From contig CBFFRP010000376.1 in assembly GCA_965644295.1 (NCBI GenBank), positions 182,285 through 246,284 of the forward strand: 64,000 bases of DNA, in the 5' to 3' direction. The notes under the pieces were generated by a model, which was not told the origin of the DNA, did no database searches, and was given only the letters and a program-made list of their open reading frames with translations. This stretch comes from Paraphysomonas bandaiensis (Eukaryota; Protista; Chrysophyceae). The position numbers were made by a program, and so were the translations under genes. Shown in pieces: positions 52,644 to 64,000 of this stretch. Numbering within the stretch: the first letter of the stretch is position 1; every line of letters starts with the position of its first letter.

Positions 52644-55600
52644 ATGGTGCACCCTAGAGTTGCCATCTTAATCATGGCATTAGGTGCATTTGCTATTGCC
52701 ACCAACGCACCTACATCATCACCTTCAGTTGACCCCTCATCCTGTCCTCAAGTTAGTAGTAATCATACGGATGTAATAGATATGGTAAATAAAATGCCAG
52801 TTAATAAGAAATGGTTAGAGGGTGGTTATGCCAGTGTAGATGACCAGGAGTGGGTCGCAGTGTCTACATCTGTCAGTACATTTTCTAACGCTAGTGTTTT
52901 TGTGAGTCTTCCGAATATTCCGGGAGAAACTTCATCTGATGGTTATCCTGCGATTGCCAGAGTTCGAAATGTCCAGACATTGTCTGGGACCGTAACTTTT
53001 GAGACTCGCATCTACCAAGCAAATGATAGTTACTGTTCGAAGGAGTGGGCGATACCAGAGCCTATATCCCCGGCAATGACACTATCTTGGTTAGTAGCTG
53101 AGCATGGCGTGTACAATGTTTCAAACAATATGTTTGTGGTTGGTGAAGGTCCAATTACCAGACAGGATAATGATCCCAGTAACAATGCTAATTTCGTTCG
53201 ATTCAATTTCCCGCCTGGATGTGAGTCATCGACAATATATTGTGCGTATCCGGAAGGTGTGGATGCTGGAGTGGTATTGCAGCTTCAGACGCTTGTGTAT
53301 GATCGTTTGTTGATTCCTCGGACTAGGAATGTTGGTCGTCGCTTCTTCCGAGCAGTGTTACAGCCGCATGATTCATCCGATCCGTCCTACTATGTGATGA
53401 ACGCTACAGCTGAAACTTTGGCCTACTTTTCGTTTGCGGATTCTGTTGCAATTAGTTGTGTTGAGGGTTTAACATTTGAGGGTGCTATATTTAACGGCGT
53501 GACTGATGTGAGACGGCATATTGACTTTCAATACACTTACTTGACTCTTCCTGGTATATTCGGCACAGTCGGGAGCTCCACTAGTTTGTCGGATTCGACT
53601 GGTTTGCGTGCATTTAATCGTACTACTACCGGCGCAAGTATCATTACCCAGGAAGATCAATGTGTGGACGAGGAAACTATTCACACGGCTGAGGAGACTG
53701 TGTTTACCTTTGTCGTTGGTGAGCAATCGCTGGCCTCGTCTTGCACGATCTGTAATGTTGCTTTCTCACCAACTGTGTTTAGTTCGCCCACGTCTTCTCC
53801 GTCGTTCGTTCCTAGCTTTTCACCGACACATACTCCGACTTTTATTCCTTCTAATTCGCCCACTTTTTCACCAACTTCTATTCCATCGAGCGGGCCTACT
53901 TTGAGCCCGACGAATGCACCCACCGTTTGTCCTACATGTGGACCTACTTCCTGTCCAACAGCTACGCCTTCTGTTTTACCTACTGTTGGACCTACACAAT
54001 GTCCAACTGGTGCTCCTACTTCTTTTCCGACGGCTGCACCTACTGCAAGCCCAACAGTTGCCCCCACCGGGTCGCCTACATTGAAGCCTACATCGAGCCC
54101 AACAGGTGCACCATCCGTGTCGCCAACATCTGGACCTACTGCAAGCCCAACAGTTGCCCCCACCGGTTCACCTACATTGGATCCTACATCTAGTCCGACG
54201 GTTATTCCCACTACTGCACCGTCAGTGTTGCCCACAACACCGAATACCACAATGACACCAACATTTGTTCCTACTACGTCACTTCCAACCGTGTCACCTA
54301 CAACATCTCCTACCTCTTCACCCACGTCGGAACCGTCGCAACAGCCTTCCGCTTCACCAAGTTTTGCTCCATCTGGTTCACCGACTTTGTCCCCCACATC
54401 TTCACCCACGTTGGAACCGTCCCATCAGCCTTCTGCTTCACCAAGTTTTGCTCCATCTGGTTCTCCAACTTTGTCCCCTACATCTTCACCCACGTCCTCT
54501 CCTACGATTACTCCTACAGTTGTGGAGACTCTCTCTCCTACAATCTCTAATAGCTCCTGTGGTGCTAAGGAGACAGGAGATTTGTATGATTTGGTCAGCA
54601 AAGAAGAGATTGTCAGTACCTGGCTAGAGGGTGGATTTGCTGGTGTTGATGACCAGGAGTGGGTGACAATATCTACATCTGTCAGTACATTTTCTAACGC
54701 TAGTGTTTTTGTGAGTCTTCCGAATATTCCGGGAGAAACTTCATCTGATGGTTATCCTGCGATTGCTAGAGTTCGAAATGTCCAGACATTGTCTGGGACC
54801 GTAACTTTTGAGACTCGCATCTACCAAGCAAATGATAGTTACTGTTCGAAGGAGTGGGCGATACCAGAGCCTATATCTCCGGCTTTGTCATTATCTTGGT
54901 TAGTAGTTGAACATGGTGCTTACAATTTATCAGGTAGTTTCTTTATTGTTGGTGAAGGTCCAATTACCAGACAGGATAATGATCCCACTAACAATGCTAA
55001 TTTCGTTCGATTCAATTTCCCGCCTGGATGTGAGTCATCGACAATATATTGTGCGTATCCGGAAGGTGTGGATGCTGGAGTGGTATTGCAGCTTCAGACG
55101 CTTGTGTATGATCGTTTGTTGATTCCTAGAACACTGGTAGTTGGTCGTCGCTTCTTCCGAGCAGTGTTGCAGCCGCATGATTCATCCGATCCGTCCTACT
55201 ATGTGATGAACGCTACAGCTGAAACTTTGGCCTACTTTTCGTTTGCGGATTCTGTTGCAATTAGTTGTGTTGAGGGTTTAACATTTGAGGGTGCTATATT
55301 TAACGGCGTGACTAATGTGAGACGTCATATTGACTTTCAATACACTTACTTGACTCTTCCTGGTATATTCGGCACAGTCGGGAGCTCCACTAGCTTGTCG
55401 GATTCGACTGGTTTGCGTGCATTTGATCGTACTACTACCGGCGCAAGTATCATTACCCAGGAAGATCAATGTGTGGACGAGGAAACTATTCACACGGCTG
55501 AGGAGACTGTGTTTACCTTTGTCGTTGGTGCCCAGGATGTCGTTTCTTCTTGTACTGTGTGTCGTGCGGTGTTTGTGCCGGAGTCATCAAGTCCGACATC

Positions 55601-58600
55601 AGTCCCATCGATATCATCTCAGCCCACTATTGGGCCATCCGCTAGTCCTTCATCGAATCCTACTTTGAGTCCGACCGATGTTCCAACTGTTAATCCTACC
55701 GTTTTACCAACACTTTCACCAACAGGATCGCCTACATCAGACCCAACACTCAACCCAACAGCATCCCCTACAGTATTTCCAACAGGGATTCCATCATCCA
55801 ATCCAACAGTGGCCCCAACTCCTTCACCAACAAGTGGGCCTACATTGGAGCCTACTGCCAGCCCAACAGGTGCACCTTCTGTTTCGCCAACATCTGGACC
55901 TACTGCAAGCCCAACAGTTGCCCCCACCGGGTCGCCTACTTTGAAGCCTACATCGAGCCCAACAGGTGCACCTTCCGTTTCACCAACATCTGGACCTACT
56001 GCAAGTCCAACAGTTGCCCCCACCGGTTCACCTACATTGGATCCTACATCTAGTCCGACGGTTATTCCCACTACTGCACCGTCAGTGTTGCCCACAACAC
56101 CGAATACCACAATGACACCAACATTTGTTCCTACTACGTCACTTCCAACCGTGTCACCTACAACATCTCCTACCTCTTCACCCACGTCGGAACCGTCGCA
56201 ACAGCCTTCCGCTTCACCAAGTTTTGCTCCATCTGGTTCACCGACTTTGTCCCCCACATCTTCACCCACGTTGGAACCGTCCCATCAGCCTTCTGCTTCA
56301 CCAAGTTTTGCTCCATCTGGTTCTCCAACTTTGTCCCCTACATCTTCACCCACGTCCTCTCCTACGATTACTCCTACAGTTGTGGAGACTCTCTCTCCTA
56401 CAATCTCTAATAGCTCCTGTGGTGCTAAGGAGACAGGAGATTTGTATGATTTGGTCAGCAAAGAAGAGATTGTCAGTACCTGGCTAGAGGGTGGATTTGC
56501 TGGTGTTGATGACCAGGAGTGGGTGACAATATCTACATCTGTCAGTACATTTTCTAACGCTAGTGTTTTTGTGAGTCTTCCGAATATTCCGGGAGAAACT
56601 TCATCTGATGGTTATCCTGCGATTGCTAGAGTTCGAAATGTCCAGACATTGTCTGGGACCGTGACTTTTGAGACTCGCATCTACCAAGCAAATGATAGTT
56701 ACTGTTCGAAGGAGTGGGCGATACCAGAGCCTATATCTCCGGCTTTGTCATTATCTTGGTTAGTAGTTGAACATGGTGCTTACAATTTATCAGGTAGTTT
56801 CTTTATTGTTGGTGAAGGTCCAATTACCAGACAGGATAATGATCCCACTAACAATGCTAATTTCGTTCGATTCAATTTCCCGCCTGGATGTGAGTCATCG
56901 ACAATATATTGTGCGTATCCGGAAGGTGTGGATGCTGGAGTGGTATTGCAGCTTCAGACGCTTGTGTATGATCGTTTGTTGATTCCTAGAACACTGGTAG
57001 TTGGTCGTCGCTTCTTCCGAGCAGTGTTGCAGCCGCATGATTCATCCGATCCGTCCTACTATGTGATGAACGCTACAGCTGAAACTTTGGCCTACTTTTC
57101 GTTTGCGGATTCTGTAGGTATTAGTTGTGTTGAGGGTTTAACATTTGAGGGTGCTATATTTAACGGCGTGACTAATGTGAGACGTCATATTGACTTTCAA
57201 TACACTTACTTGACTCTTCCTGGTATATTCGGCACAGTCGGGAGCTCCACTAGCTTGTCGGATTCGACTGGTTTGCGTGCATTTGATCGTACTACTACCG
57301 GCGCAAGTATCATTACCCAGGAAGATCAATGTGTGGACGAGGAAACTATTCACACGGCTGAGGAGACTGTGTTTACCTTTGTCGTTGGTGCCCAGGATGT
57401 CGTTTCTTCTTGTACTGTGTGTCGTGCGGTGTTTGTGCCGGAGTCATCAAGTCCGACATCAGTCCCATCGATATCATCTCAGCCCACTATTGGGCCATCC
57501 GCTAGTCCTTCATCGAATCCTACTTTGAGTCCGACCGATGTTCCAACTGTTAATCCTACCGTTTTACCAACACTTTCACCAACAGGATCGCCTACATCAG
57601 ACCCAACACTCAACCCAACAGCATCCCCTACAGTATTTCCAACAGGGATTCCATCATCCAATCCAACAGTGGCCCCAACTCCTTCACCAACAAGTGGGCC
57701 TACATTGGAGCCTACTGCCAGCCCAACAGGTGCACCTTCTGTTTCGCCAACATCTGGACCTACTGCAAGCCCAACAAGTGCACCTTCCGTTTCACCAACA
57801 TCTGGACCTACTGCAAGTCCAACAGTTGCCCCAATTCCTTCACCAACAAGTGGGCCTACATTGGAGCCTACTGCAAGCCCAACAGTTGCCCCCACCGGTT
57901 CACCTACATTGGAGCCTACATCGAGCCCAACAGGTGCACCTTCCGTTTCACCAACATCTGGTCCTACTGCAAGCCCAACAGTTGCCCCCACCTGTTCGCC
58001 TACATTGGAGCCTACATCGAGCCCAACAGGTGCACCTTCTGTTTCACCAACATCTGGTCCTACTGCAAGCCCAACAGTTGCCCCCACCTGTTCGCCTACA
58101 TTGGAGCCTACATCGAGCCCAACAGGTGCACCTTCTGTTTCGCCAACATCTGGTCCTACTGCAAGCCCAACAGTTGCCCCCACCGGTTCGCCTACATTGG
58201 AGCCTACATCGAGCCCAACAGGTACACCTTCTGTTTCGCCAACATCTGGTCCTACTGCAAGTCCAACAGTTGCCCCCACCGGTTCACCTACTTTGGAGCC
58301 TACATCGAGCCCAACAGGTGCACCTTCCGTTTCACCAACATCTGGACCTACTGCAAGTCCAACAGTTGCCCCCACCGGTTCACCTACATTGGATCCTACA
58401 TCTAGTCCGACGGTTATTCCCACTACTGCACCGTCAGTGTTGCCCACAACACCGAATACCACAATGACACCAACATTTGTTCCTACAACGTCACTTCCAA
58501 CCGTGTCACCTACAACATCTCCTACCTCTTCACCCACATCGGAACCGTCGCAACAGCCTTCCGCTTCACCAAGTTTTGCTCCATCTGGTTCTCCGACTTT

Positions 58601-61600
58601 GTCGCCCACATCTTCACCTACGTCGGAACCGTCCCTTCAGCCTTCCGCTTTACCAAGCTTTGCTCCATCTGGTTCTCCGACTTTGTCCCCTACATCTTCA
58701 CCCACATCGGAACCGTCGCAACAGCCTTCCGCTTCACCAAGTTTTGCTCCATCTGGTTCACCGACTTTGTCGCCCACATCTTCACCGACATCGGAGCCGT
58801 CCCATCAGCCTTCCGGTTCACCAAGCTTTGCTCCATCTAGTTCTCCAACTTTGTCCCCTACATGTTCACCCACGTTGGAACCGTCCCATCAGCCTTCCGC
58901 TTTACCAAGTTTTGCTCCATCTGGTTCTCCGACTTTGTCCCCTACATCTTCACCCACATCGGAACCGTCGCAACAGCCTTCCGCTTCACCAAGTGTTGCT
59001 CCATCTGGTTCTCCGACTTTGTCCCCCACATCTTCACCCACGTTGGAACCGTCCCATCAGCCTTCCGCTTCACCAAGTTTTGCTCCATCTGGTTCTCCAA
59101 CTTTGTCCCCTACATCTTCACCCACGTCCTCTCCTACGATTACTCCTACAGTTGTGGAGACTCTCTCTCCTACAATCTCTAATAGCTCCTGTGGTGCTAA
59201 GGAGACAGGAGATTTGTATGATTTGGTCAGCAAAGAAGAGATTGTCAGTACCTGGCTAGAGGGTGGATTTGCTGGTGTTGATGACCAGGAGTGGGTGACA
59301 ATATCTACATCTGTCAGTACATTTTCTAACGCTAGTGTTTTTGTGAGTCTTCCGAATATTCCGGGAGAAACTTCATCTGATGGTTATCCTGCGATTGCTA
59401 GAGTTCGAAATGTCCAGACATTGTCTGGGACCGTAACTTTTGAGACTCGCATCTACCAAGCAAATGATAGTTACTGTTCGAAGGAGTGGGCGATACCAGA
59501 GCCTATATCTCCGGCTTTGTCATTATCTTGGTTAGTAGTTGAACATGGTGCTTACAATTTATCAGGTAGTTTCTTTATTGTTGGTGAAGGTCCAATTACC
59601 AGACAGGATAATGATCCCACTAACAATGCTAATTTCGTTCGATTCAATTTCCCGCCTGGATGTGAGTCATCGACAATATATTGTGCGTATCCGGAAGGTG
59701 TGGATGCTGGAGTGGTATTGCAGCTTCAGACGCTTGTGTATGATCGTTTGTTGATTCCTAGAACACTGGTAGTTGGTCGTCGCTTCTTCCGAGCAGTGTT
59801 GCAGCCGCATGATTCATCCGATCCGTCCTACTATGTGATGAACGCTACAGCTGAAACTTTGGCCTACTTTTCGTTTGCGGATTCTGTTGCAATTAGTTGT
59901 GTTGAGGGTTTAACATTTGAGGGTGCTATATTTAACGGCGTGACTAATGTGAGACGTCATATTGACTTTCAATACACTTACTTGACTCTTCCTGGTATAT
60001 TCGGCACAGTCGGGAGCTCCACTAGCTTGTCGGATTCGACTGGTTTGCGTGCATTTGATCGTACTACTACCGGCGCAAGTATCATTACCCAGGAAGATCA
60101 ATGTGTGGACGAGGAAACTATTCACACGGCTGAGGAGACTGTGTTTACCTTTGTCGTTGGTGCCCAGGATGTCGTTTCTTCTTGTACTGTGTGTCGTGCG
60201 GTGTTTGTGCCGGAGTCATCAAGTCCGACATCAGTCCCATCGATATCATCTCAGCCCACTATTGGGCCATCCGCTAGTCCTTCATCGAATCCTACTTTGA
60301 GTCCGACCGATGTTCCAACTGTTAATCCTACCGTTTTACCAACACTTTCACCAACAGGATCGCCTACATCAGACCCAACACTCAACCCAACAGCATCCCC
60401 TACAGTATTTCCAACAGGGATTCCATCATCCAATCCAACAGTGGCCCCAACTCCTTCACCAACAAGTGGGCCTACATTGGAGCCTACTGCCAGCCCAACA
60501 GGTGCACCTTCTGTTTCGCCAACATCTGGACCTACTGCAAGCCCAACAGGTGCCCCCACCGGTTCACCTACATTGGATCCTACATCGAGCCCAACAGGTG
60601 CACCTTCTGTTTCGCCAACATCTGGTCCTACTGCAAGCCCAACAGTTGCCCCCACCGGTTCACCTACTTTGGAGCCTACATCGAGCCCAACAGGTGCGCC
60701 TTCCGTTTCACCAACATCTGGACCTACTGCAAGTCCAACAGTTGCCCCCACCAGTTCACCTACATTGGATCCTACATCTAGTCCGACGGTTATTCCCACT
60801 ACTGCACCGTCAGTGTTGCCCACAACACCGAATACCACATTAGCACCAACATTTGTTCCTACAACGTCACTTCCAACCGTGTCACCTACAACATCTCCTA
60901 CCTCTTCACCCACATCGGAACCGTCGCAACAGCCTTCCGCTTCACCAAGTTTTGCTCCATCTGGTTCTCCGACTTTGTCCCCCACATCTTCACCCACGTT
61001 GGAACCGTCCCATCAGCCTTCCGCTTCACCAAGTTTTGCTCCATCTGGTTCTCCAACTTTGTCCCCTACATCTTCACCCACGTCCTCTCCTACGATTACT
61101 CCTACAGTTGTGGAGACTCTCTCTCCTACAATCTCTAATAGCTCCTGTGGTGCTAAGGAGACAGGAGATTTGTATGATTTGGTCAGCAAAGAAGAGATTG
61201 TCAGTACCTGGCTAGAGGGTGGATTTGCTGGTGTTGATGACCAGGAGTGGGTGACAATATCTACATCTGTCAGTACATTTTCTAACGCTAGTGTTTTTGT
61301 GAGTCTTCCGAATATTCCGGGAGAAACTTCATCTGATGGTTATCCTGCGATTGCTAGAGTTCGAAATGTCCAGACATTGTCTGGGACCGTAACTTTTGAG
61401 ACTCGCATCTACCAAGCAAATGATAGTTACTGTTCGAAGGAGTGGGCGATACCAGAGCCTATATCTCCGGCTTTGTCATTATCTTGGTTAGTAGTTGAAC
61501 ATGGTGCTTACAATTTATCAGGTAGTTTCTTTATTGTTGGTGAAGGTCCAATTACCAGACAGGATAATGATCCCACTAACAATGCTAATTTCGTTCGATT

Positions 61601-64000
61601 CAATTTCCCGCCTGGATGTGAGTCATCGACAATATATTGTGCGTATCCGGAAGGTGTGGATGCTGGAGTGGTATTGCAGCTTCAGACGCTTGTGTATGAT
61701 CGTTTGTTGATTCCTAGAACACTGGTAGTTGGTCGTCGCTTCTTCCGAGCAGTGTTGCAGCCGCATGATTCATCCGATCCGTCCTACTATGTGATGAACG
61801 CTACAGCTGAAACTTTGGCCTACTTTTCGTTTGCGGATTCTGTTGCAATTAGTTGTGTTGAGGGTTTAACATTTGAGGGTGCTATATTTAACGGCGTGAC
61901 TGATGTGAGACGTCATATTGACTTTCAATACACTTACTTGACTCTTCCTGGTATATTCGGCACAGTCGGGAGCTCCACTAGCTTGTCGGATTCGACTGGT
62001 TTGCGTGCATTTGATCGTACTACTACCGGCGCAAGTATCATTACCCAGGAAGATCAATGTGTGGACGAGGAAACTATTCACACGGCTGAGGAGACTGTGT
62101 TTACCTTTGTCGTTGGTGCCCAGGATGTCGTTTCTTCTTGTACTGTGTGTCGTGCGGTGTTTGTGCCGGAGTCATCAAGTCCGACATCAGTCCCATCGAT
62201 ATCATCTCAGCCCACTATTGGGCCATCCGCTAGTCCTTCATCGAATCCTACTTTGAGTCCGACCGATGTTCCAACTGTTAATCCTACCGTTTTACCAACA
62301 CTTTCACCAACAGGATCGCCTACATCAGACCCAACACTCAACCCAACAGCATCCCCTACAGTATTTCCAACAGGGATTCCATCATCCAATCCAACAGTGG
62401 CCCCAACTCCTTCACCAACAAGTGGGCCTACATTGGAGCCTACTGCCAGCCCAACAGGTGCACCTTCTGTTTCGCCAACATCTGGACCTACTGCAAGCCC
62501 AACAGGTGCCCCCACCGGTTCACCTACATTGGAGCCTACATCGAGCCCAACAGGTGCACCTTCTGTTTCGCCAACATCTGGTCCTACTGCAAGCCCAACA
62601 GTTGCCCCCACCGGTTCACCTACTTTGGAGCCTACATCGAGCCCAACAGGTGCGCCTTCCGTTTCACCAACATCTGGACCTACTGCAAGTCCAACAGTTG
62701 CCCCCACCAGTTCACCTACATTGGATCCTACATCTAGTCCGACGGTTATTCCCACTACTGCACCGTCAGTGTTGCCCACAACACCGAATACCACATTAGC
62801 ACCAACATTTGTTCCTACAACGTCACTTCCAACCGTGTCACCTACAACATCTCCTACCTCTTCACCCACATCGGAACCGTCGCAACAGCCTTCCGCTTCA
62901 CCAAGTTTTGCTCCATCTGGTTCTCCGACTTTGTCCCCCACATCTTCACCCACGTTGGAACCGTCCCATCAGCCTTCCGCTTCACCAAGTTTTGCTCCAT
63001 CTGGTTCTCCAACTTTGTCCCCTACATCTTCACCCACGTCCTCTCCTACGATTACTCCTACAGTTGTGGAGACTCTCTCTCCTACAATCTCTAATAGCTC
63101 CTGTGGTGCTAAGGAGACAGGAGATTTGTATGATTTGGTCAGCAAAGAAGAGATTGTCAGTACCTGGCTAGAGGGTGGATTTGCTGGTGTTGATGACCAG
63201 GAGTGGGTGACAATATCTACATCTGTCAGTACATTTTCTAACGCTAGTGTTTTTGTGAGTCTTCCGAATATTCCGGGAGAAACTTCATCTGATGGTTATC
63301 CTGCGATTGCTAGAGTTCGAAATGTCCAGACATTGTCTGGGACCGTAACTTTTGAGACTCGCATCTACCAAGCAAATGATAGTTACTGTTCGAAGGAGTG
63401 GGCGATACCAGAGCCTATATCTCCGGCTTTGTCATTATCTTGGTTAGTAGTTGAACATGGTGCTTACAATTTATCAGGTAGTTTCTTTATTGTTGGTGAA
63501 GGTCCAATTACCAGACAGGATAATGATCCCACTAACAATGCTAATTTCGTTCGATTCAATTTCCCGCCTGGATGTGAGTCATCGACAATATATTGTGCGT
63601 ATCCGGAAGGTGTGGATGCTGGAGTGGTATTGCAGCTTCAGACGCTTGTGTATGATCGTTTGTTGATTCCTAGAACACTGGTAGTTGGTCGTCGCTTCTT
63701 CCGAGCAGTGTTGCAGCCGCATGATTCATCCGATCCGTCCTACTATGTGATGAACGCTACAGCTGAAACTTTGGCCTACTTTTCGTTTGCGGATTCTGTT
63801 GCAATTAGTTGTGTTGAGGGTTTAACATTTGAGGGTGCTATATTTAACGGCGTGACTAATGTGAGACGTCATATTGACTTTCAATACACTTACTTGACTC
63901 TTCCTGGTATATTCGGCACAGTCGGGAGCTCCACTAGCTTGTCGGATTCGACTGGTTTGCGTGCATTTGATCGTACTACTACCGGCGCAAGTATCATTAC
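52644..64000 (+). CDS. Giant secreted/surface adhesin-like protein: signal peptide plus at least 6 tandem [triple H-type-lectin-like module + P/T/S mucin-like spacer]; 3' end lies beyond the window
   Basis: ATG 52644 gives MVHPRVAILIMALGAFAIA (signal-like). The module-start WLEGG falls at 52812, 54621, 56481, 59253, 61209 and 63165, with spacings 1809, 1860, 2772, 1956 and 1956, all multiples of 3. I saw no stop in this frame, and the ORF track lists no terminated ORF in it. Confidence 0.88.
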   Translation, partial: MVHPRVAILIMALGAFAIATNAPTSSPSVDPSSCPQVSSNHTDVIDMVNKMPVNKKWLEGGYASVDDQEWVAVSTSVSTFSNASVFVSLPNIPGETSSDGYPAIARVRNVQTLSGTVTFETRIYQANDSYCSKEWAIPEPISPAMTLSWLVAEHGVYNVSNNMFVVGEGPITRQDNDPSNNANFVRFNFPPGCESSTIYCAYPEGVDAGVVLQLQTLVYDRLLIPRTRNVGRRFFRAVLQPHDSSDPSYYVMNATAETLAYFSFADSVAISCVEGLTFEGAIFNGVTDVRRHIDFQYTYLTLPGIFGTVGSSTSLSDSTGLRAFNRTTTGASIITQEDQCVDEETIHTAEETVFTFVVGEQSLASSCTICNVAFSPTVFSSPTSSPSFVPSFSPTHTPTFIPSNSPTFSPTSIPSSGPTLSPTNAPTVCPTCGPTSCPTATPSVLPTVGPTQCPTGAPTSFPTAAPTASPTVAPTGSPTLKPTSSPTGAPSVSPTSGPTASPTVAPTGSPTLDPTSSPTVIPTTAPSVLPTTPNTTMTPTFVPTTSLPTVSPTTSPTSSPTSEPSQQPSASPSFAPSGSPTLSPTSSPTLEPSHQPSASPSFAPSGSPTLSPTSSPTSSPTITPTVVETLSPTISNSSCGAKETGDLYDLVSKEEIVSTWLEGGFAGVDDQEWVTISTSVSTFSNASVFVSLPNIPGETSSDGYPAIARVRNVQTLSGTVTFETRIYQANDSYCSKEWAIPEPISPALSLSWLVVEHGAYNLSGSFFIVGEGPITRQDNDPTNNANFVRFNFPPGCESSTIYCAYPEGVDAGVVLQLQTLVYDRLLIPRTLVVGRRFFRAVLQPHDSSDPSYYVMNATAETLAYFSFADSVAISCVEGLTFEGAIFNGVTNVRRHIDFQYTYLTLPGIFGTVGSSTSLSDSTGLRAFDRTTTGASIITQEDQCVDEETIHTAEETVFTFVVGAQDVVSSCTVCRAVFVPESSSPTSVPSISSQPTIGPSASPSSNPTLSPTDVPTVNPTVLPTLSPTGSPTSDPTLNPTASPTVFPTGIPSSNPTVAPTPSPTSGPTLEPTASPTGAPSVSPTSGPTASPTVAPTGSPTLKPTSSPTGAPSVSPTSGPTASPTVAPTGSPTLDPTSSPTVIPTTAPSVLPTTPNTTMTPTFVPTTSLPTVSPTTSPTSSPTSEPSQQPSASPSFAPSGSPTLSPTSSPTLEPSHQPSASPSFAPSGSPTLSPTSSPTSSPTITPTVVETLSPTISNSSCGAKETGDLYDLVSKEEIVSTWLEGGFAGVDDQEWVTISTSVSTFSNASVFVSLPNIPGETSSDGYPAIARVRNVQTLSGTVTFETRIYQANDSYCSKEWAIPEPISPALSLSWLVVEHGAYNLSGSFFIVGEGPITRQDNDPTNNANFVRFNFPPGCESSTIYCAYPEGVDAGVVLQLQTLVYDRLLIPRTLVVGRRFFRAVLQPHDSSDPSYYVMNATAETLAYFSFADSVGISCVEGLTFEGAIFNGVTNVRRHIDFQYTYLTLPGIFGTVGSSTSLSDSTGLRAFDRTTTGASIITQEDQCVDEETIHTAEETVFTFVVGAQDVVSSCTVCRAVFVPESSSPTSVPSISSQPTIGPSASPSSNPTLSPTDVPTVNPTVLPTLSPTGSPTSDPTLNPTASPTVFPTGIPSSNPTVAPTPSPTSGPTLEPTASPTGAPSVSPTSGPTASPTSAPSVSPTSGPTASPTVAPIPSPTSGPTLEPTASPTVAPTGSPTLEPTSSPTGAPSVSPTSGPTASPTVAPTCSPTLEPTSSPTGAPSVSPTSGPTASPTVAPTCSPTLEPTSSPTGAPSVSPTSGPTASPTVAPTGSPTLEPTSSPTGTPSVSPTSGPTASPTVAPTGSPTLEPTSSPTGAPSVSPTSGPTASPTVAPTGSPTLDPTSSPTVIPTTAPSVLPTTPNTTMTPTFVPTTSLPTVSPTTSPTSSPTSEPSQQPSASPSFAPSGSPTLSPTSSPTSEPSLQPSALPSFAPSGSPTLSPTSSPTSEPSQQPSASPSFAPSGSPTLSPTSSPTSEPSHQPSGSPSFAPSSSPTLSPTCSPTLEPSHQPSALPSFAPSGSPTLSPTSSPTSEPSQQPSASPSVAPSGSPTLSPTSSPTLEPSHQPSASPSFAPSGSPTLSPTSSPTSSPTITPTVVETLSPTISNSSCGAKETGDLYDLVSKEEIVSTWLEGGFAGVDDQEWVTISTSVSTFSNASVFVSLPNIPGETSSDGYPAIARVRNVQTLSGTVTFETRIYQANDSYCSKEWAIPEPISPALSLSWLVVEHGAYNLSGSFFIVGEGPITRQDNDPTNNANFVRFNFPPGCESSTIYCAYPEGVDAGVVLQLQTLVYDRLLIPRTLVVGRRFFRAVLQPHDSSDPSYYVMNATAETLAYFSFADSVAISCVEGLTFEGAIFNGVTNVRRHIDFQYTYLTLPGIFGTVGSSTSLSDSTGLRAFDRTTTGASIITQEDQCVDEETIHTAEETVFTFVVGAQDVVSSCTVCRAVFVPESSSPTSVPSISSQPTIGPSASPSSNPTLSPTDVPTVNPTVLPTLSPTGSPTSDPTLNPTASPTVFPTGIPSSNPTVAPTPSPTSGPTLEPTASPTGAPSVSPTSGPTASPTGAPTGSPTLDPTSSPTGAPSVSPTSGPTASPTVAPTGSPTLEPTSSPTGAPSVSPTSGPTASPTVAPTSSPTLDPTSSPTVIPTTAPSVLPTTPNTTLAPTFVPTTSLPTVSPTTSPTSSPTSEPSQQPSASPSFAPSGSPTLSPTSSPTLEPSHQPSASPSFAPSGSPTLSPTSSPTSSPTITPTVVETLSPTISNSSCGAKETGDLYDLVSKEEIVSTWLEGGFAGVDDQEWVTISTSVSTFSNASVFVSLPNIPGETSSDGYPAIARVRNVQTLSGTVTFETRIYQANDSYCSKEWAIPEPISPALSLSWLVVEHGAYNLSGSFFIVGEGPITRQDNDPTNNANFVRFNFPPGCESSTIYCAYPEGVDAGVVLQLQTLVYDRLLIPRTLVVGRRFFRAVLQPHDSSDPSYYVMNATAETLAYFSFADSVAISCVEGLTFEGAIFNGVTDVRRHIDFQYTYLTLPGIFGTVGSSTSLSDSTGLRAFDRTTTGASIITQEDQCVDEETIHTAEETVFTFVVGAQDVVSSCTVCRAVFVPESSSPTSVPSISSQPTIGPSASPSSNPTLSPTDVPTVNPTVLPTLSPTGSPTSDPTLNPTASPTVFPTGIPSSNPTVAPTPSPTSGPTLEPTASPTGAPSVSPTSGPTASPTGAPTGSPTLEPTSSPTGAPSVSPTSGPTASPTVAPTGSPTLEPTSSPTGAPSVSPTSGPTASPTVAPTSSPTLDPTSSPTVIPTTAPSVLPTTPNTTLAPTFVPTTSLPTVSPTTSPTSSPTSEPSQQPSASPSFAPSGSPTLSPTSSPTLEPSHQPSASPSFAPSGSPTLSPTSSPTSSPTITPTVVETLSPTISNSSCGAKETGDLYDLVSKEEIVSTWLEGGFAGVDDQEWVTISTSVSTFSNASVFVSLPNIPGETSSDGYPAIARVRNVQTLSGTVTFETRIYQANDSYCSKEWAIPEPISPALSLSWLVVEHGAYNLSGSFFIVGEGPITRQDNDPTNNANFVRFNFPPGCESSTIYCAYPEGVDAGVVLQLQTLVYDRLLIPRTLVVGRRFFRAVLQPHDSSDPSYYVMNATAETLAYFSFADSVAISCVEGLTFEGAIFNGVTNVRRHIDFQYTYLTLPGIFGTVGSSTSLSDSTGLRAFDRTTTGASII
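52812..64000 (+). repeat. Intragenic tandem macro-repeat (1.8-2.8 kb units) with nested 96-bp and 84-bp minisatellites
   Basis: Near-identical ~0.9-kb module DNA in units 2-6. The 84-bp unit (EPSQQPSASPSFAPSGSPTLSPTSSPTL) occurs 2x in most spacers and 7x in spacer 3 (58541-59045). The 96-bp unit (SPTGAPSVSPTSGPTASPTVAPTGSPTLEPTS) varies in copy number. Confidence 0.95.

What the first reader, a model, noticed from the sequence alone, without database searches (positions are those of the whole stretch)
52812..53725. The repeated module looks like a single-chain pseudo-trimer of H-type-lectin-like domains of prokaryotic flavour
Seen: the module divides into three ~100-aa sub-repeats sharing a pattern. 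Sub-repeat 1: LEGG..VDDQEWVAVS..FSNASVFVS..PAIARVRNV..TFETRI..TLSWLVAEHG. Sub-repeat 2: VVGEG..FVRFNF..GVVLQLQT..LIPRTRNVGRRFFRAVLQ..ETLAYFSF. Sub-repeat 3: FEGA..VTDVRRHIDFQYTY..PGIFG..DSTGLRAFNRTTTGASIITQEDQCVDEETIHTAEETVFTFVVG. Established: H-type lectins (Helix pomatia agglutinin, discoidin C-domain) are beta-sandwich trimers that bind Gal/GalNAc at subunit interfaces. From memory, triplicated versions with E.G..W..V.F...F..PVV..R..NVT..GF....EE...DxExxH..E.V occur in bacterial and archaeal surface proteins. Inference: three fused subdomains recreate the trimer in one chain, possibly acquired horizontally and then given eukaryotic disulfides and glycosylation.
Basis: partly seen in the sequence, partly recalled or inferred. 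Interest (0 to 1): 0.8.

Follow-up and report, generated by a model that had tools for sequence, protein, structure and literature searches.

The report
Single-chain triple H-type-lectin-like module
The repeated ~305-residue bead of this giant protist surface protein is three fused H-type-lectin-like beta-sandwiches, sharing its three-part layout with uncharacterised bacterial proteins; no domain database recognises the protist version, and its sugar binding is untested.

Summary

- **Gene.** Window 52812-53725 is the first of six copies of a 304-residue module. They lie in one uninterrupted frame of at least 3785 codons that starts with a signal peptide at 52644.
- **Repeat.** The three thirds are not detectably alike when compared directly. 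Each is the positional counterpart of one of three clearly related sub-domains in bacterial proteins (profile E 1e-11, 5e-6, 2e-15). Those bacterial proteins pass Pfam's H_lectin threshold.
- **Fold.** AlphaFold gives a compact all-beta globule (pLDDT 90, pTM 0.91) with three six-strand units. Thirds 1 and 3 each find the same top set: discoidin I, Helix pomatia agglutinin, SLL-2 and pyocin or phage fibre tips.
- **Shape match.** The whole module superposes at TM 0.89 on an ESM Atlas cluster labelled mostly bacterial, 11% of whose members carry H_lectin.
- **Direct Pfam test.** Pfam itself finds nothing in the module.
- **Not shown.** The three-fold geometry, sugar binding, and the direction or fact of horizontal transfer remain open. 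The eukaryote-type modules form one clade on a long branch, with no close prokaryotic donor.
- **Context.** The genome holds at least 88 copies. A second contig that overlaps the window's end continues into LRR, REJ and membrane-spanning parts.

The scan had already noted triple H-lectin-like heads on other DNA of this genome.

The parts
52644..52703 (+). Start codon and hydrophobic N-terminal signal peptide of the giant ORF
   Evidence: Translation shows Met followed by a hydrophobic stretch, with stops upstream in frame. Homologues also begin with hydrophobic leaders.
52812..53725 (+). Module 1 (304 aa), the stretch named in the finding
   Evidence: AF2 model of 52779-53760: pLDDT 90.3, pTM 0.91.
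52803..53105 (+). Sub-domain 1 (residues 9-109 of the 327-aa query)
   Evidence: Six strands. Modelled alone: pLDDT 85.9. Top VIA hits are LKA1 gp49 C-terminus Z 7.8, discoidin I Z 7.4, R2 pyocin Z 7.1 and HPA Z 6.4. hhalign to bacterial position 1: E 9.8e-12.
53106..53444 (+). Sub-domain 2 (residues 110-222), the most diverged third, with an inserted Cys148/Cys155 loop
   Evidence: Strand pattern. VIA hits to C-terminal domains of phage capsule depolymerases, Z 2.4-2.7. hhalign to bacterial position 2: E 4.6e-6; 7 of 16 members of that bacterial set match PF09458.
53445..53732 (+). Sub-domain 3 (residues 223-318); it keeps the bacterial acidic-His motif (QEDQC-DEE--H---E)
   Evidence: VIA: R2 pyocin fibre foot Z 5.1 (85 aa, 2.1 A), AP22 gp53 Z 5.1, discoidin I Z 4.1, SLL-2 Z 4.0, HPA Z 3.9. 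Alignment A3 with bacterial position 3 has invariant P, R, E, H, E. hhalign E 2e-15.
53736..53753 (+). C-terminal Cys-x-x-Cys cap of the module
   Evidence: Cys322 is present in 65% and Cys325 in 92% of family members.
53760..54560 (+). Pro/Thr/Ser-rich linker (mucin-like stalk) after module 1
   Evidence: Translation. Relatives carry Pfam PT repeat PF04886 in the same place.
54621..55532 (+). Module 2
   Evidence: 94% aa identity to module 1, dN/dS about 0.33.
56481..57392 (+). Module 3
59253..60164 (+). Module 4
61209..62120 (+). Module 5
63165..64000 (+). Module 6, cut by the end of the contig
   Evidence: It is 99.8% identical over 995 nt to the start of contig C543 in reverse orientation.

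Best explanation
Each ~305-residue bead is one polypeptide made of three tandem six-stranded beta-sandwiches of the H-type-lectin class. This is the fold of Helix pomatia agglutinin, the discoidin C-domain, and pyocin or phage fibre tips.

Shown:
- The three thirds are the positional counterparts of the three sub-domains of a triple module found in many bacterial proteins and, by shape, in archaeal ones.
- The triplication therefore predates the split between the prokaryotic and protist versions.
- The protist version has diverged beyond Pfam's reach and has acquired an invariant set of cysteines.

Inferred:
- The three sandwiches pack around a pseudo-three-fold axis, like the homotrimer of classical H-type lectins. 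One chain would then recreate the inter-subunit grooves where those lectins bind Gal/GalNAc.
- Only the third sub-domain keeps the full ancestral acidic-His motif, so the three grooves are probably not equivalent.
- At least six and probably eight such heads sit on Pro/Thr/Ser-rich, probably O-glycosylated stalks at the distal end of a giant secreted or membrane protein.
- If contig C543 is the gene's continuation, the protein ends in LRR, a REJ domain and membrane-spanning segments.
- The most likely job is multivalent binding of glycans, or another surface ligand, on particles, prey or matrix, feeding into a polycystin-1/REJ-type receptor.
For: Gene reality:
- One open frame of at least 3785 codons with a signal peptide.
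- dN/dS about 0.33 between copies.
- 742 cluster representatives match the module profile at E<=1e-3 and 102 at E<=1e-30.
- At least 88 copies in this genome, inside open frames of up to 5732 aa.

Fold:
- AF2 pLDDT 90.3 and pTM 0.91, all-beta, three units of six strands.
- Third 1 modelled alone and third 3 in the whole model return the same top set: discoidin I, HPA, SLL-2, R-pyocin fibre foot, AP22 gp53 and tailspike C-termini.
- In the third-1 search the top 12 rows are all of this class; from rank 13, at Z 5.1 and below, the rows are unrelated beta-sandwiches.
- For third 1 alone, Foldseek's top four hits are HPA or HAA, although not significant.

Whole module:
- TM 0.89 over 314 residues to an ESM Atlas cluster of 328-aa proteins carrying H_lectin.
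- TM 0.72-0.75 to bacterial protease, Ig-like and glycoside hydrolase proteins with H_lectin, and to Bathyarchaeota proteins.
- Language-model features point to the same clusters, score 0.97.

Sequence link:
- The module profile hits proteins at E about 1e-19 to 1e-21 that pass Pfam H_lectin's gathering score. Among them is a Crocosphaera chwakensis matrixin, WP_008274678.1.
- Another is an S8 peptidase sitting among bacterial polysaccharide-synthesis genes.
- The 3x3 hhalign matrix is strongest on its diagonal.
- The bacterial position-2 profile finds only HPA and HAA in the whole PDB, at E about 0.5.

Context:
- C543 overlaps the window's last repeat at 99.8% identity. It continues into PT repeats, LRR, REJ (PF02010, 143.9 bits) and hydrophobic segments.
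- H-type lectins are homotrimers that bind GalNAc at subunit interfaces (PMC6048534).
Against: - Pfam H_lectin does not match the module at all at E<=10, nor anything in this genome at E<=1.
- All structural Z-scores are below 8, the range where the tool warns that a match may reflect only a common arrangement. Whole-model Foldseek against PDB has no hit at E<=1e-3.
- Third 2 has only weak structural matches, Z 2.4-2.7.
It rests on pTM and on low-Z whole-model alignments to the single-chain TNF trimer 4zch (Z 3.4) and the PCSK9 C-terminal domain (Z 2.4; Foldseek probability 0.72).
- No ligand residue could be mapped. The family-invariant Arg aligns to HPA chain position 67 in a non-significant alignment.
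- The join between C376 and C543 is inferred from a repeat overlap.
Confidence: 0.72

Rival explanations
1. The module has the H-type-lectin fold but is not a lectin. It would be a repurposed rigid beta-sandwich head that binds a protein or peptide ligand, or simply a structural spacer or adhesive bead in a mucin-like coat, as in CofB, where the lectin groove holds a peptide.
For: - CofB's H-type lectin domain does not bind GalNAc and binds the CofJ peptide instead (PMC6048534).
- In thirds 1 and 2 the bacterial His-x-x-Glu motif is lost. His is replaced by the invariant Cys86 in third 1.
- No canonical sugar-binding residues could be mapped.
Against: - The equivalent Arg on strand 4 is conserved in all three thirds: R61 nearly invariant, R181 and R277 invariant.
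- Third 3 keeps the invariant Q-E-D-Q-C ... H ... E motif across the eukaryote-type family and shares R, E, H, E with bacteria. That fits a conserved ligand site better than a mere spacer.
- Bacterial relatives sit on glycoside hydrolases and next to polysaccharide-synthesis genes.
Confidence: 0.2
2. The three sandwiches do not form a pseudo-trimer. They would be three tandem domains packed in some other compact or elongated way, so the 'recreated trimer' idea fails even though the domains are H-lectin-like.
For: - The geometry was never measured here.
- Whole-model matches to pseudo-three-fold proteins are weak: Z 2.4-3.4 and rmsd 5-6 A.
Against: - pTM 0.91 means a single rigid globule with confident inter-domain placement.
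- All three sub-domains align at once onto the three protomers of a single-chain TNF trimer (181 residues spanning model residues 11-321) and onto the three sub-domains of the PCSK9 C-terminal domain (201 residues spanning 12-316).
- All solved relatives of the sub-domain (HPA, discoidin, fibre tips) are homotrimers.
- The number three is conserved from bacteria to protists.
Confidence: 0.15
3. There was no horizontal transfer. The triple module would be ancient and vertically inherited in eukaryotes, with loss in most lineages, or transfer would have gone from eukaryotes to bacteria.
For: - Eukaryote-type modules form a single clade separated from the bacterial ones by a very long branch (length 1.67, SH-aLRT 100), with no bacterial sequence nested inside.
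- A pattern scan of 185,579 prokaryotic species found no close relative.
- Labelled members come from more than one lineage: Paraphysomonas, Mallomonas, a diatom-labelled Atlas cluster and a Picozoa SAG.
Against: - Bacterial and archaeal versions occur in many phyla and many domain contexts: cyanobacteria, alphaproteobacteria, Desulfobacterota, Planctomycetota, Bacteroidota and Bathyarchaeota.
- In bacteria the three sub-domains are still clearly alike (E 1e-14 to 1e-19). In the protist family they have diverged beyond recognition. That fits a prokaryotic origin followed by rapid eukaryotic divergence.
- Labelled eukaryotic carriers are few and patchy.
Confidence: 0.35

Closest known systems
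Classical H-type lectins: Helix pomatia agglutinin (2CCV), discoidin I C-domain (2W94), SLL-2 (3WMP); Pfam PF09458
   Same: - About 100-residue six-stranded beta-sandwich.
- Third 1 aligns at Z 7.4, 6.4 and 5.9, and third 3 at Z 4.1, 3.9 and 4.0.
- There is a transitive profile link to PF09458-positive domains.
   Different: - Those lectins are one-domain chains that assemble as homotrimers. Here three diverged copies sit in one chain.
- There is no direct Pfam match.
- The module carries five invariant cysteines plus a C-terminal Cys-x-x-Cys.
- Its sugar-binding residues are not mapped.
Uncharacterised bacterial/archaeal proteins with tandem triple H_lectin modules (e.g. Crocosphaera chwakensis matrixin WP_008274678.1; S8 peptidase in GCA_034411955.1; Wenxinia marina WP_018302585.1)
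   Same: - The same three-sub-domain module with position-by-position correspondence (hhalign E 9.8e-12, 4.6e-6, 2e-15).
- Shared motif P...R..N...(E/D)-rich...H..E.
- Whole-module shape TM 0.72-0.89.
   Different: - Bacterial sub-domains are still clearly alike and lack the cysteines.
- They are attached to proteases, esterases, Ig-like or glycoside hydrolase domains rather than to mucin stalks.
- Sequence distance from the protist clade is large (branch length 1.67).
C-terminal knobs of R-type pyocin fibres (6CL6, 6CU2), phage AP22 gp53 (4MTM; Pfam PF21882) and tailspike/depolymerase C-termini (4RU4, 4RU5, 4Y9V, 7W1C)
   Same: - They are the best structural matches for all three thirds.
- PF21882 co-hits the bacterial sub-domains.
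- They are receptor-binding tips of trimeric fibres.
   Different: - They are trimeric by assembly of three chains.
- They belong to viral or bacteriocin machinery.
- They have no mucin stalk.
Single-chain pseudo-trimers: PCSK9 C-terminal domain; engineered single-chain TNF-family trimers (4ZCH)
   Same: Three beta-sandwich sub-domains in one chain around a pseudo-three-fold axis. Whole-model alignments span all three thirds.
   Different: - The sub-domain topology differs.
- Scores are very low (Z 2.4-3.4), so this is an analogy of architecture and not homology.
Polycystin-1 / sea-urchin REJ receptors
   Same: If C543 continues the gene, the protein is a giant ectodomain with lectin-type heads, LRR, a REJ domain (PF02010, 143.9 bits) and a multi-pass membrane tail.
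   Different: - The heads are triple H-type-lectin-like modules on mucin stalks, not C-type lectin or PKD repeats.
- The join of the two contigs is inferred.

Membership tests
H-type lectin domain (Pfam PF09458 H_lectin) | Direct match to the Pfam model at or above its gathering score (24 bits) | tested here: not met
   There is no Pfam family at E<=10 for module 1, module 2 or the N-terminal 385 aa. A six-frame search of the whole genome with PF09458 gave no match at E<=1.
H-type lectin domain (Pfam PF09458 H_lectin) | Homology to bona fide members shown through intermediate sequences or profiles | tested here: met
   - The module profile hits P0159, P0161, P0162, P0164, P0169, P0171 and P0172 at E about 1e-19 to 1e-21. 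Each passes the PF09458 gathering score, at 29.7-57.2 bits.
- 7 of 16 isolated bacterial position-2 sub-domains match PF09458 at E<=0.01.
- hhalign of thirds 1, 2 and 3 against that set gives E 1.5e-4, 4.6e-6 and 1.2e-5. The combined position-3 alignment against it gives E 3.2e-16.
H-type lectin domain (Pfam PF09458 H_lectin) | Six-stranded antiparallel beta-sandwich superposable on HPA or discoidin | tested here: met
   - Third 1 alone: discoidin I Z 7.4 (83 aa, 2.9 A), HPA Z 6.4 (79 of 99 aa, 2.5 A), SLL-2 Z 5.9.
- Third 3: discoidin Z 4.1, SLL-2 Z 4.0, HPA Z 3.9.
- Third 2: only related tailspike C-termini at Z 2.4-2.7.
- All Z-scores are below 8, so the fold call leans on the consistency of the hit lists together with the sequence link.
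H-type lectin domain (Pfam PF09458 H_lectin) | Three domains arranged about a three-fold axis, with binding grooves at the interfaces | tested here: inconclusive
   The model is a compact globule (pTM 0.91). Whole-model alignments reach a single-chain TNF trimer and the PCSK9 C-terminal domain.
H-type lectin domain (Pfam PF09458 H_lectin) | Conserved Gal/GalNAc-contacting residues | not testable with these tools
   The only available residue-level alignment to HPA is non-significant and partial (E about 0.5). Conserved R61/R181/R277 and H302/E306 are noted, but their equivalence to HPA ligand residues is not established.
H-type lectin domain (Pfam PF09458 H_lectin) | Carbohydrate-binding activity | not testable with these tools
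   This needs a recombinant protein and a glycan array or calorimetry.
Prokaryotic triple H-lectin module (uncharacterised architecture) | Three tandem sub-domains, each corresponding to the same position in the relatives | tested here: met
   The hhalign matrix is strongest on the diagonal: s1-b1 E 9.8e-12, s2-b2 E 4.6e-6, s3-b3 E 2e-15, with off-diagonal values of 1.2e-5 to 6e-3. The sub-domain HMMs tile the bacterial proteins in repeating 1-2-3 order.
Prokaryotic triple H-lectin module (uncharacterised architecture) | Whole-module shape match | tested here: met
   TM 0.89 over 314 aa at rmsd 2.2 A to a 328-aa Atlas cluster. TM 0.72-0.75 over about 270 aa to bacterial multidomain proteins and Bathyarchaeota proteins.
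Polycystin-1/REJ-type receptor (whole gene) | REJ domain followed by membrane-spanning segments in the same polypeptide | tested here: inconclusive
   REJ (PF02010, 143.9 bits) and hydrophobic C-terminal segments lie on contig C543. C543 overlaps the window's last repeat at 99.8% identity over 995 nt. The overlap lies within a tandem repeat, so physical continuity is not proven.

The most novel reading that the evidence does not exclude
A bacterial triple H-lectin module was captured once by an ancestor of ochrophyte protists and hardened with disulfides. It became asymmetric, with only the groove built by sub-domain 3 keeping the ancestral acidic-His site. It then expanded to about ninety heads per genome, serving as the glycan-reading tips of giant REJ-type receptors that a phagotrophic flagellate uses to recognise prey or particles. 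This would be a previously undescribed eukaryotic lectin-receptor system.
Probability: 0.25. Interest if true: 0.75.

Novelty: new variant of a known kind. Interest (0 to 1): 0.6.

Why it matters
- **A domain family gets a fold.** At least 742 cluster representatives, and at least 88 copies in this one 62.6-Mb genome, currently carry no annotation. They now have a likely fold and a testable ligand class.
- **A natural single-chain H-type lectin trimer.** This is a useful scaffold. It would be a monomeric lectin head whose three grooves can diverge independently, and no such case turned up in four full-text searches of the held paper library.
- **An evolutionary intermediate series.** In bacteria the three sub-domains are still alike, while in protists they have diverged beyond recognition.
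- **A possible receptor function.** If the heads sit on REJ-type receptors, they are candidates for how a heterotrophic flagellate reads surface sugars on prey or particles. The molecular basis of that recognition is largely unknown.

Tried and rejected
- **Direct family scans.** Pfam on three versions of the module found nothing at E<=10. PDB sequence searches with the module and with the third-3 profile gave only chance hits, to EF-P and a sugar kinase.
- **Direct repeat detection.** Shuffled Smith-Waterman and hhalign of the thirds against each other were not significant. The repeat is visible only through bacterial intermediates.
- **Whole-model Foldseek against PDB.** There was no hit at E<=1e-3. 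The top rows, alphavirus E1 with rmsd about 35 A, were rejected as meaningless. The PCSK9 C-terminal domain was kept only as an architectural analogy.
- **Close prokaryotic donor.** A pattern scan of genome contigs produced 50 pattern matches, none confirmed by tblastn.
- **Taxon labels.** Three cluster look-ups and a second word search gave only a handful of names, so the eukaryotic range stays poorly defined.
- **Diatom adhesive domains.** I considered from memory whether the module is a known diatom adhesive-trail domain (choice-of-anchor A or GDPH). No Pfam family of any kind matches it. That rules out choice-of-anchor A if, as I recall, it has a Pfam model; GDPH was not tested.
- **Antisense ORFs.** The long ORFs opposite the linkers, such as 53681-54409 on the minus strand, are by-products of the Pro/Thr/Ser repeat codons and not genes.
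- **Literature.** Four full-text searches found no description of a single-chain triple H-type lectin or of H-type lectins in chrysophytes or diatoms. H-lectin domains are reported in Toxoplasma MIC14 and MIC15.
Full report
**What is at the coordinates**

The + strand frame through 52812-53725 is open. It belongs to a single uninterrupted reading frame that starts with a Met and a hydrophobic leader at 52644. It runs for at least 3785 codons to the end of the window, which is also the end of the contig.

The frame holds six copies of a 304-residue module, starting at 52812, 54621, 56481, 59253, 61209 and 63165. They are separated by Pro/Thr/Ser-rich linkers of differing length. Copies 2-5 are nearly identical to each other. 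Copy 1 is about 94% identical to them, with dN 0.037 and dS 0.11, a ratio of about 0.33. The sequence is therefore coding and under constraint.

ORFs listed on the opposite strand across the linkers are by-products of the repeat codons.

**Is there an internal three-fold repeat?**

Direct comparison does not show one. Local alignment of the thirds scores no better than shuffles, with z below 0.5. Profile-profile comparison of family sub-alignments gives P 0.016, 0.17 and 0.085, with probabilities below 3%.

The predicted structure does show one. With a 29-sequence alignment, AlphaFold2 gives mean pLDDT 90.3 and pTM 0.91. The model is all-beta, with three successive units of six strands in the same order and of similar lengths.

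The decisive evidence comes from distant relatives. A profile of the module was searched against 1.84 billion representatives. It found 742 proteins at E<=1e-3 and 102 at E<=1e-30.

In the more distant hits, HMMs of the three thirds tile the proteins in a repeating 1-2-3 order every 90-100 residues. I cut out these bacterial sub-domains by position and compared profiles:

| Comparison | hhalign E-value |
|---|---|
| third 1 vs bacterial position 1 | 9.8e-12 |
| third 2 vs bacterial position 2 | 4.6e-6 |
| third 3 vs bacterial position 3 | 2e-15 |
| off-diagonal, protist third vs other bacterial position | 1.2e-5 to 6e-3 |
| bacterial positions against each other | 1.7e-16, 4.6e-14, 7.3e-19 |

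The module is therefore a true triplication. The triplication is older than the divergence of the bacterial and protist versions, and the protist thirds have since drifted apart beyond direct recognition.

**Is it H-type-lectin-like?**

- **Direct Pfam test fails.** Pfam finds nothing in the module at E<=10. PF09458 finds nothing in the whole genome in six frames.
- **Indirect sequence link holds.** The distant profile hits P0159, P0161, P0162, P0164, P0169, P0171 and P0172 each pass the PF09458 gathering score, at 29.7-57.2 bits. Some also match PF21882, the AP22 gp53 fibre tip.
- **Which positions carry the signal.** Isolated bacterial position-1 and position-2 sub-domains match PF09458 at 15-25 bits. 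Position-3 sub-domains do not match on their own.
- **Position 2 set.** 7 of 16 position-2 sub-domains match at E<=0.01.
- **Position 3 is still linked.** A joint alignment of protist third 3 with bacterial position 3 matches the position-2 profile at E 3.2e-16 and probability 98.7%.
- **PDB specificity.** The position-2 profile, searched against all PDB sequences, returns only Helix pomatia and Helix aspersa agglutinins. At E about 0.5 this is not significant, but no other chain is returned.

The structural comparisons agree:

- In the whole model, the best matches all fall on third 3:

| Match | Z | aligned / rmsd |
|---|---|---|
| R2 pyocin fibre foot | 5.1 | 85 aa, 2.1 A |
| AP22 gp53 | 5.1 | |
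| discoidin I H-lectin domain | 4.1 | |
| SLL-2 | 4.0 | |
| HPA | 3.9 | |

- Third 2 matches the C-terminal domains of phage capsule depolymerases at Z 2.4-2.7.
- Third 1 was modelled alone (pLDDT 85.9) and returns the same set more strongly:

| Match | Z |
|---|---|
| LKA1 gp49 C-terminus | 7.8 |
| discoidin I | 7.4 |
| R2 pyocin | 7.1 |
| gp53 | 6.7 |
| HPA | 6.4 |
| SLL-2 | 5.9 |

- The top 12 rows are all of this class. From rank 13, at Z 5.1 and below, the list turns to unrelated beta-sandwiches.
- Foldseek ranks HPA and HAA first for third 1, although non-significantly.
- All Z-scores lie under the tool's caution line of 8. The fold assignment therefore rests on three things together: the same small family heading two independent lists, the sequence link, and the Atlas results below.

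**Whole-module relatives**

A shape search of the ESM Atlas matches the entire module at TM 0.89. The match covers 314 residues at rmsd 2.2 A, to a cluster of 328-aa proteins labelled mostly bacterial, with H_lectin in 11% of members.

It matches at TM 0.72-0.75 to bacterial reprolysin, Ig-like and glycoside-hydrolase proteins carrying H_lectin. It also matches a Bathyarchaeota cluster. The language-model feature search independently ranks the same H_lectin clusters first, with score 0.97.

Named bacterial carriers include:
- a Crocosphaera chwakensis matrixin (WP_008274678.1);
- a Wenxinia marina protein (WP_018302585.1);
- a Desulfoplanes formicivorans esterase;
- an S8 peptidase lying among rhamnose-pathway and glycosyltransferase genes on a bacterial contig.

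**Pseudo-trimer packing**

I could not measure this, because model coordinates are not exposed to scripts.

In favour:
- pTM 0.91 means one rigid globule.
- Whole-model alignments span all three thirds of a single-chain TNF-family trimer (181 residues, Z 3.4) and of the PCSK9 C-terminal domain (201 residues, Z 2.4; Foldseek probability 0.72).
- Every solved relative of the sub-domain is a homotrimer. H-type lectins bind GalNAc at the subunit interfaces (PMC6048534).
- The count of three is conserved from bacteria to protists.

I rate the pseudo-three-fold arrangement at about 0.7.

**What changed in the protist version**

Five cysteines are invariant: residues 86, 148, 155, 227 and 295 of the 327-aa query. 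Cys325 is nearly invariant and Cys322 is common. A further Cys lies about 21 residues upstream of each copy in this gene, giving eight per bead. None of the aligned bacterial sub-domains has a cysteine in those columns.

Cys295 replaces a bacterial Ser or Ala in the acidic motif. Cys86 replaces the conserved bacterial His of sub-domain 1.

The Arg on strand 4 is kept in all three thirds (R61, R181, R277). The full acidic-His-Glu motif survives only in third 3, with H302 invariant and E306 nearly invariant. This suggests that the three grooves are no longer equivalent. That is an inference.

Modules carry about three N-x-S/T sites on average, and only the one at residue 82 is widely conserved. 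Glycosylation itself is untested.

**Context and likely role**

The genome is 62.6 Mb in 669 contigs. It has at least 88 matches to the module, mostly inside open frames of 2000-5700 codons.

Contig C543, read in reverse, overlaps the window's last, truncated repeat at 99.8% identity over 995 nt. It then continues for 4886 codons:
- three modules, the first overlapping the window's sixth;
- an unassigned region of about 260 aa;
- PT repeats;
- LRR;
- a REJ domain (PF02010, 143.9 bits);
- a Cys-rich stretch;
- several hydrophobic segments before the stop.

If the two contigs are one gene, the protein is roughly 8300 residues. The lectin-like heads would sit at the distal end of a polycystin-1/REJ-type receptor. 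The overlap lies within a tandem repeat, so continuity is likely but not proven.

Earlier notes of this scan describe the same kind of head on other genes of this genome and call the organism Paraphysomonas-like. I did not verify the organism. My own labelled relatives are Paraphysomonas (MMETSP, 39% identity), Mallomonas annulata, a diatom-labelled Atlas cluster and a Picozoa single-cell assembly.

The most likely mechanism is multivalent ligand capture by many heads held out on extended, probably O-glycosylated stalks. The ligand is probably a glycan. CofB shows that this fold can be repurposed to bind a peptide, so I put sugar binding at about 0.5.

**Horizontal transfer**

I built a tree of 105 full-length modules.

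The tree puts 93 eukaryote-type rows on one side of a branch of length 1.67 (SH-aLRT 100). A C-type-lectin-bearing protein (P0126) sits between them and the bacteria.

No bacterial row nests within the eukaryote-type clade, and no close prokaryotic relative exists in 185,579 species genomes. This fits a single origin followed by a large radiation.

The wide prokaryotic spread, and the better-preserved internal repeat in bacteria, favour a bacterial source. The tree is effectively unrooted, bacterial sampling is thin and most eukaryote-type rows are unlabelled. Direction and timing therefore cannot be settled.

**Novelty**

Pfam does not recognise the protist family, and every source name seen for it reads 'hypothetical protein' or is blank. 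Four full-text searches found no description of a single-chain triple H-type lectin, or of H-type lectins in chrysophytes or diatoms. H-lectin domains are reported in apicomplexan MIC14 and MIC15.

The fold and the domain family are known. New here are the fused, diverged, disulfide-bearing triple form, its massive expansion, and its placement on giant mucin-stalked receptors. I class it as a new variant of a known kind.

**Limits**

- No coordinates were available for symmetry or disulfide geometry.
- No ligand residue mapping was possible.

Noticed in passing
window 63006-64000 and G000:C543 (loci L012, L013): The contig ends exactly at the window's end. Contig C543, read in reverse, overlaps the last repeat at 99.8% identity over 995 nt. 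It continues the frame for 4886 codons into PT repeats, LRR, a REJ domain (143.9 bits) and hydrophobic segments, with a stop at C543:8396. It is probably the missing 3' part of this gene.
   Followed up: partly
L013, about aa 1340-1600 of the C543 open frame: A region of about 260 aa lies between the last module and the PT repeats. It contains Trp, Tyr and Cys residues and has no Pfam match.
   Followed up: no
window 53681-54409 (-), 55619-56269 (-) and similar: Long antisense ORFs of 216-242 aa, rich in Gly, Val, Asp and Glu, lie opposite the Pro/Thr/Ser linkers. They look like by-products of the repeat codons and not genes.
   Followed up: no
window 53760-63110: Linker length differs between copies: module spacing is 603, 620, 924, 652 and 652 aa. 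The cause is in-frame expansion of short Pro/Thr/Ser repeat units, and the third linker is about 300 aa longer than the others.
   Followed up: no
P0126 (1432 aa, ENA metagenome): This protein combines a C-type lectin domain (PF00059) with three triple modules. In the tree it branches between the bacterial modules and the main eukaryote-type clade, so it may be an intermediate form.
   Followed up: partly
P0206, P0046, P0127 (relatives from metagenomes): The same module is fused to other partners elsewhere: a PAE/Notum-type esterase domain (PF03283), LRRs, and a PAN domain.
   Followed up: no
G000:C380:42-9411: At least seven tandem copies of a more distant version of the module (46% identity) occur at a regular spacing of about 1257 nt. 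They lie in short open frames of 351-417 aa, unlike the giant-ORF arrangement seen elsewhere.
   Followed up: no
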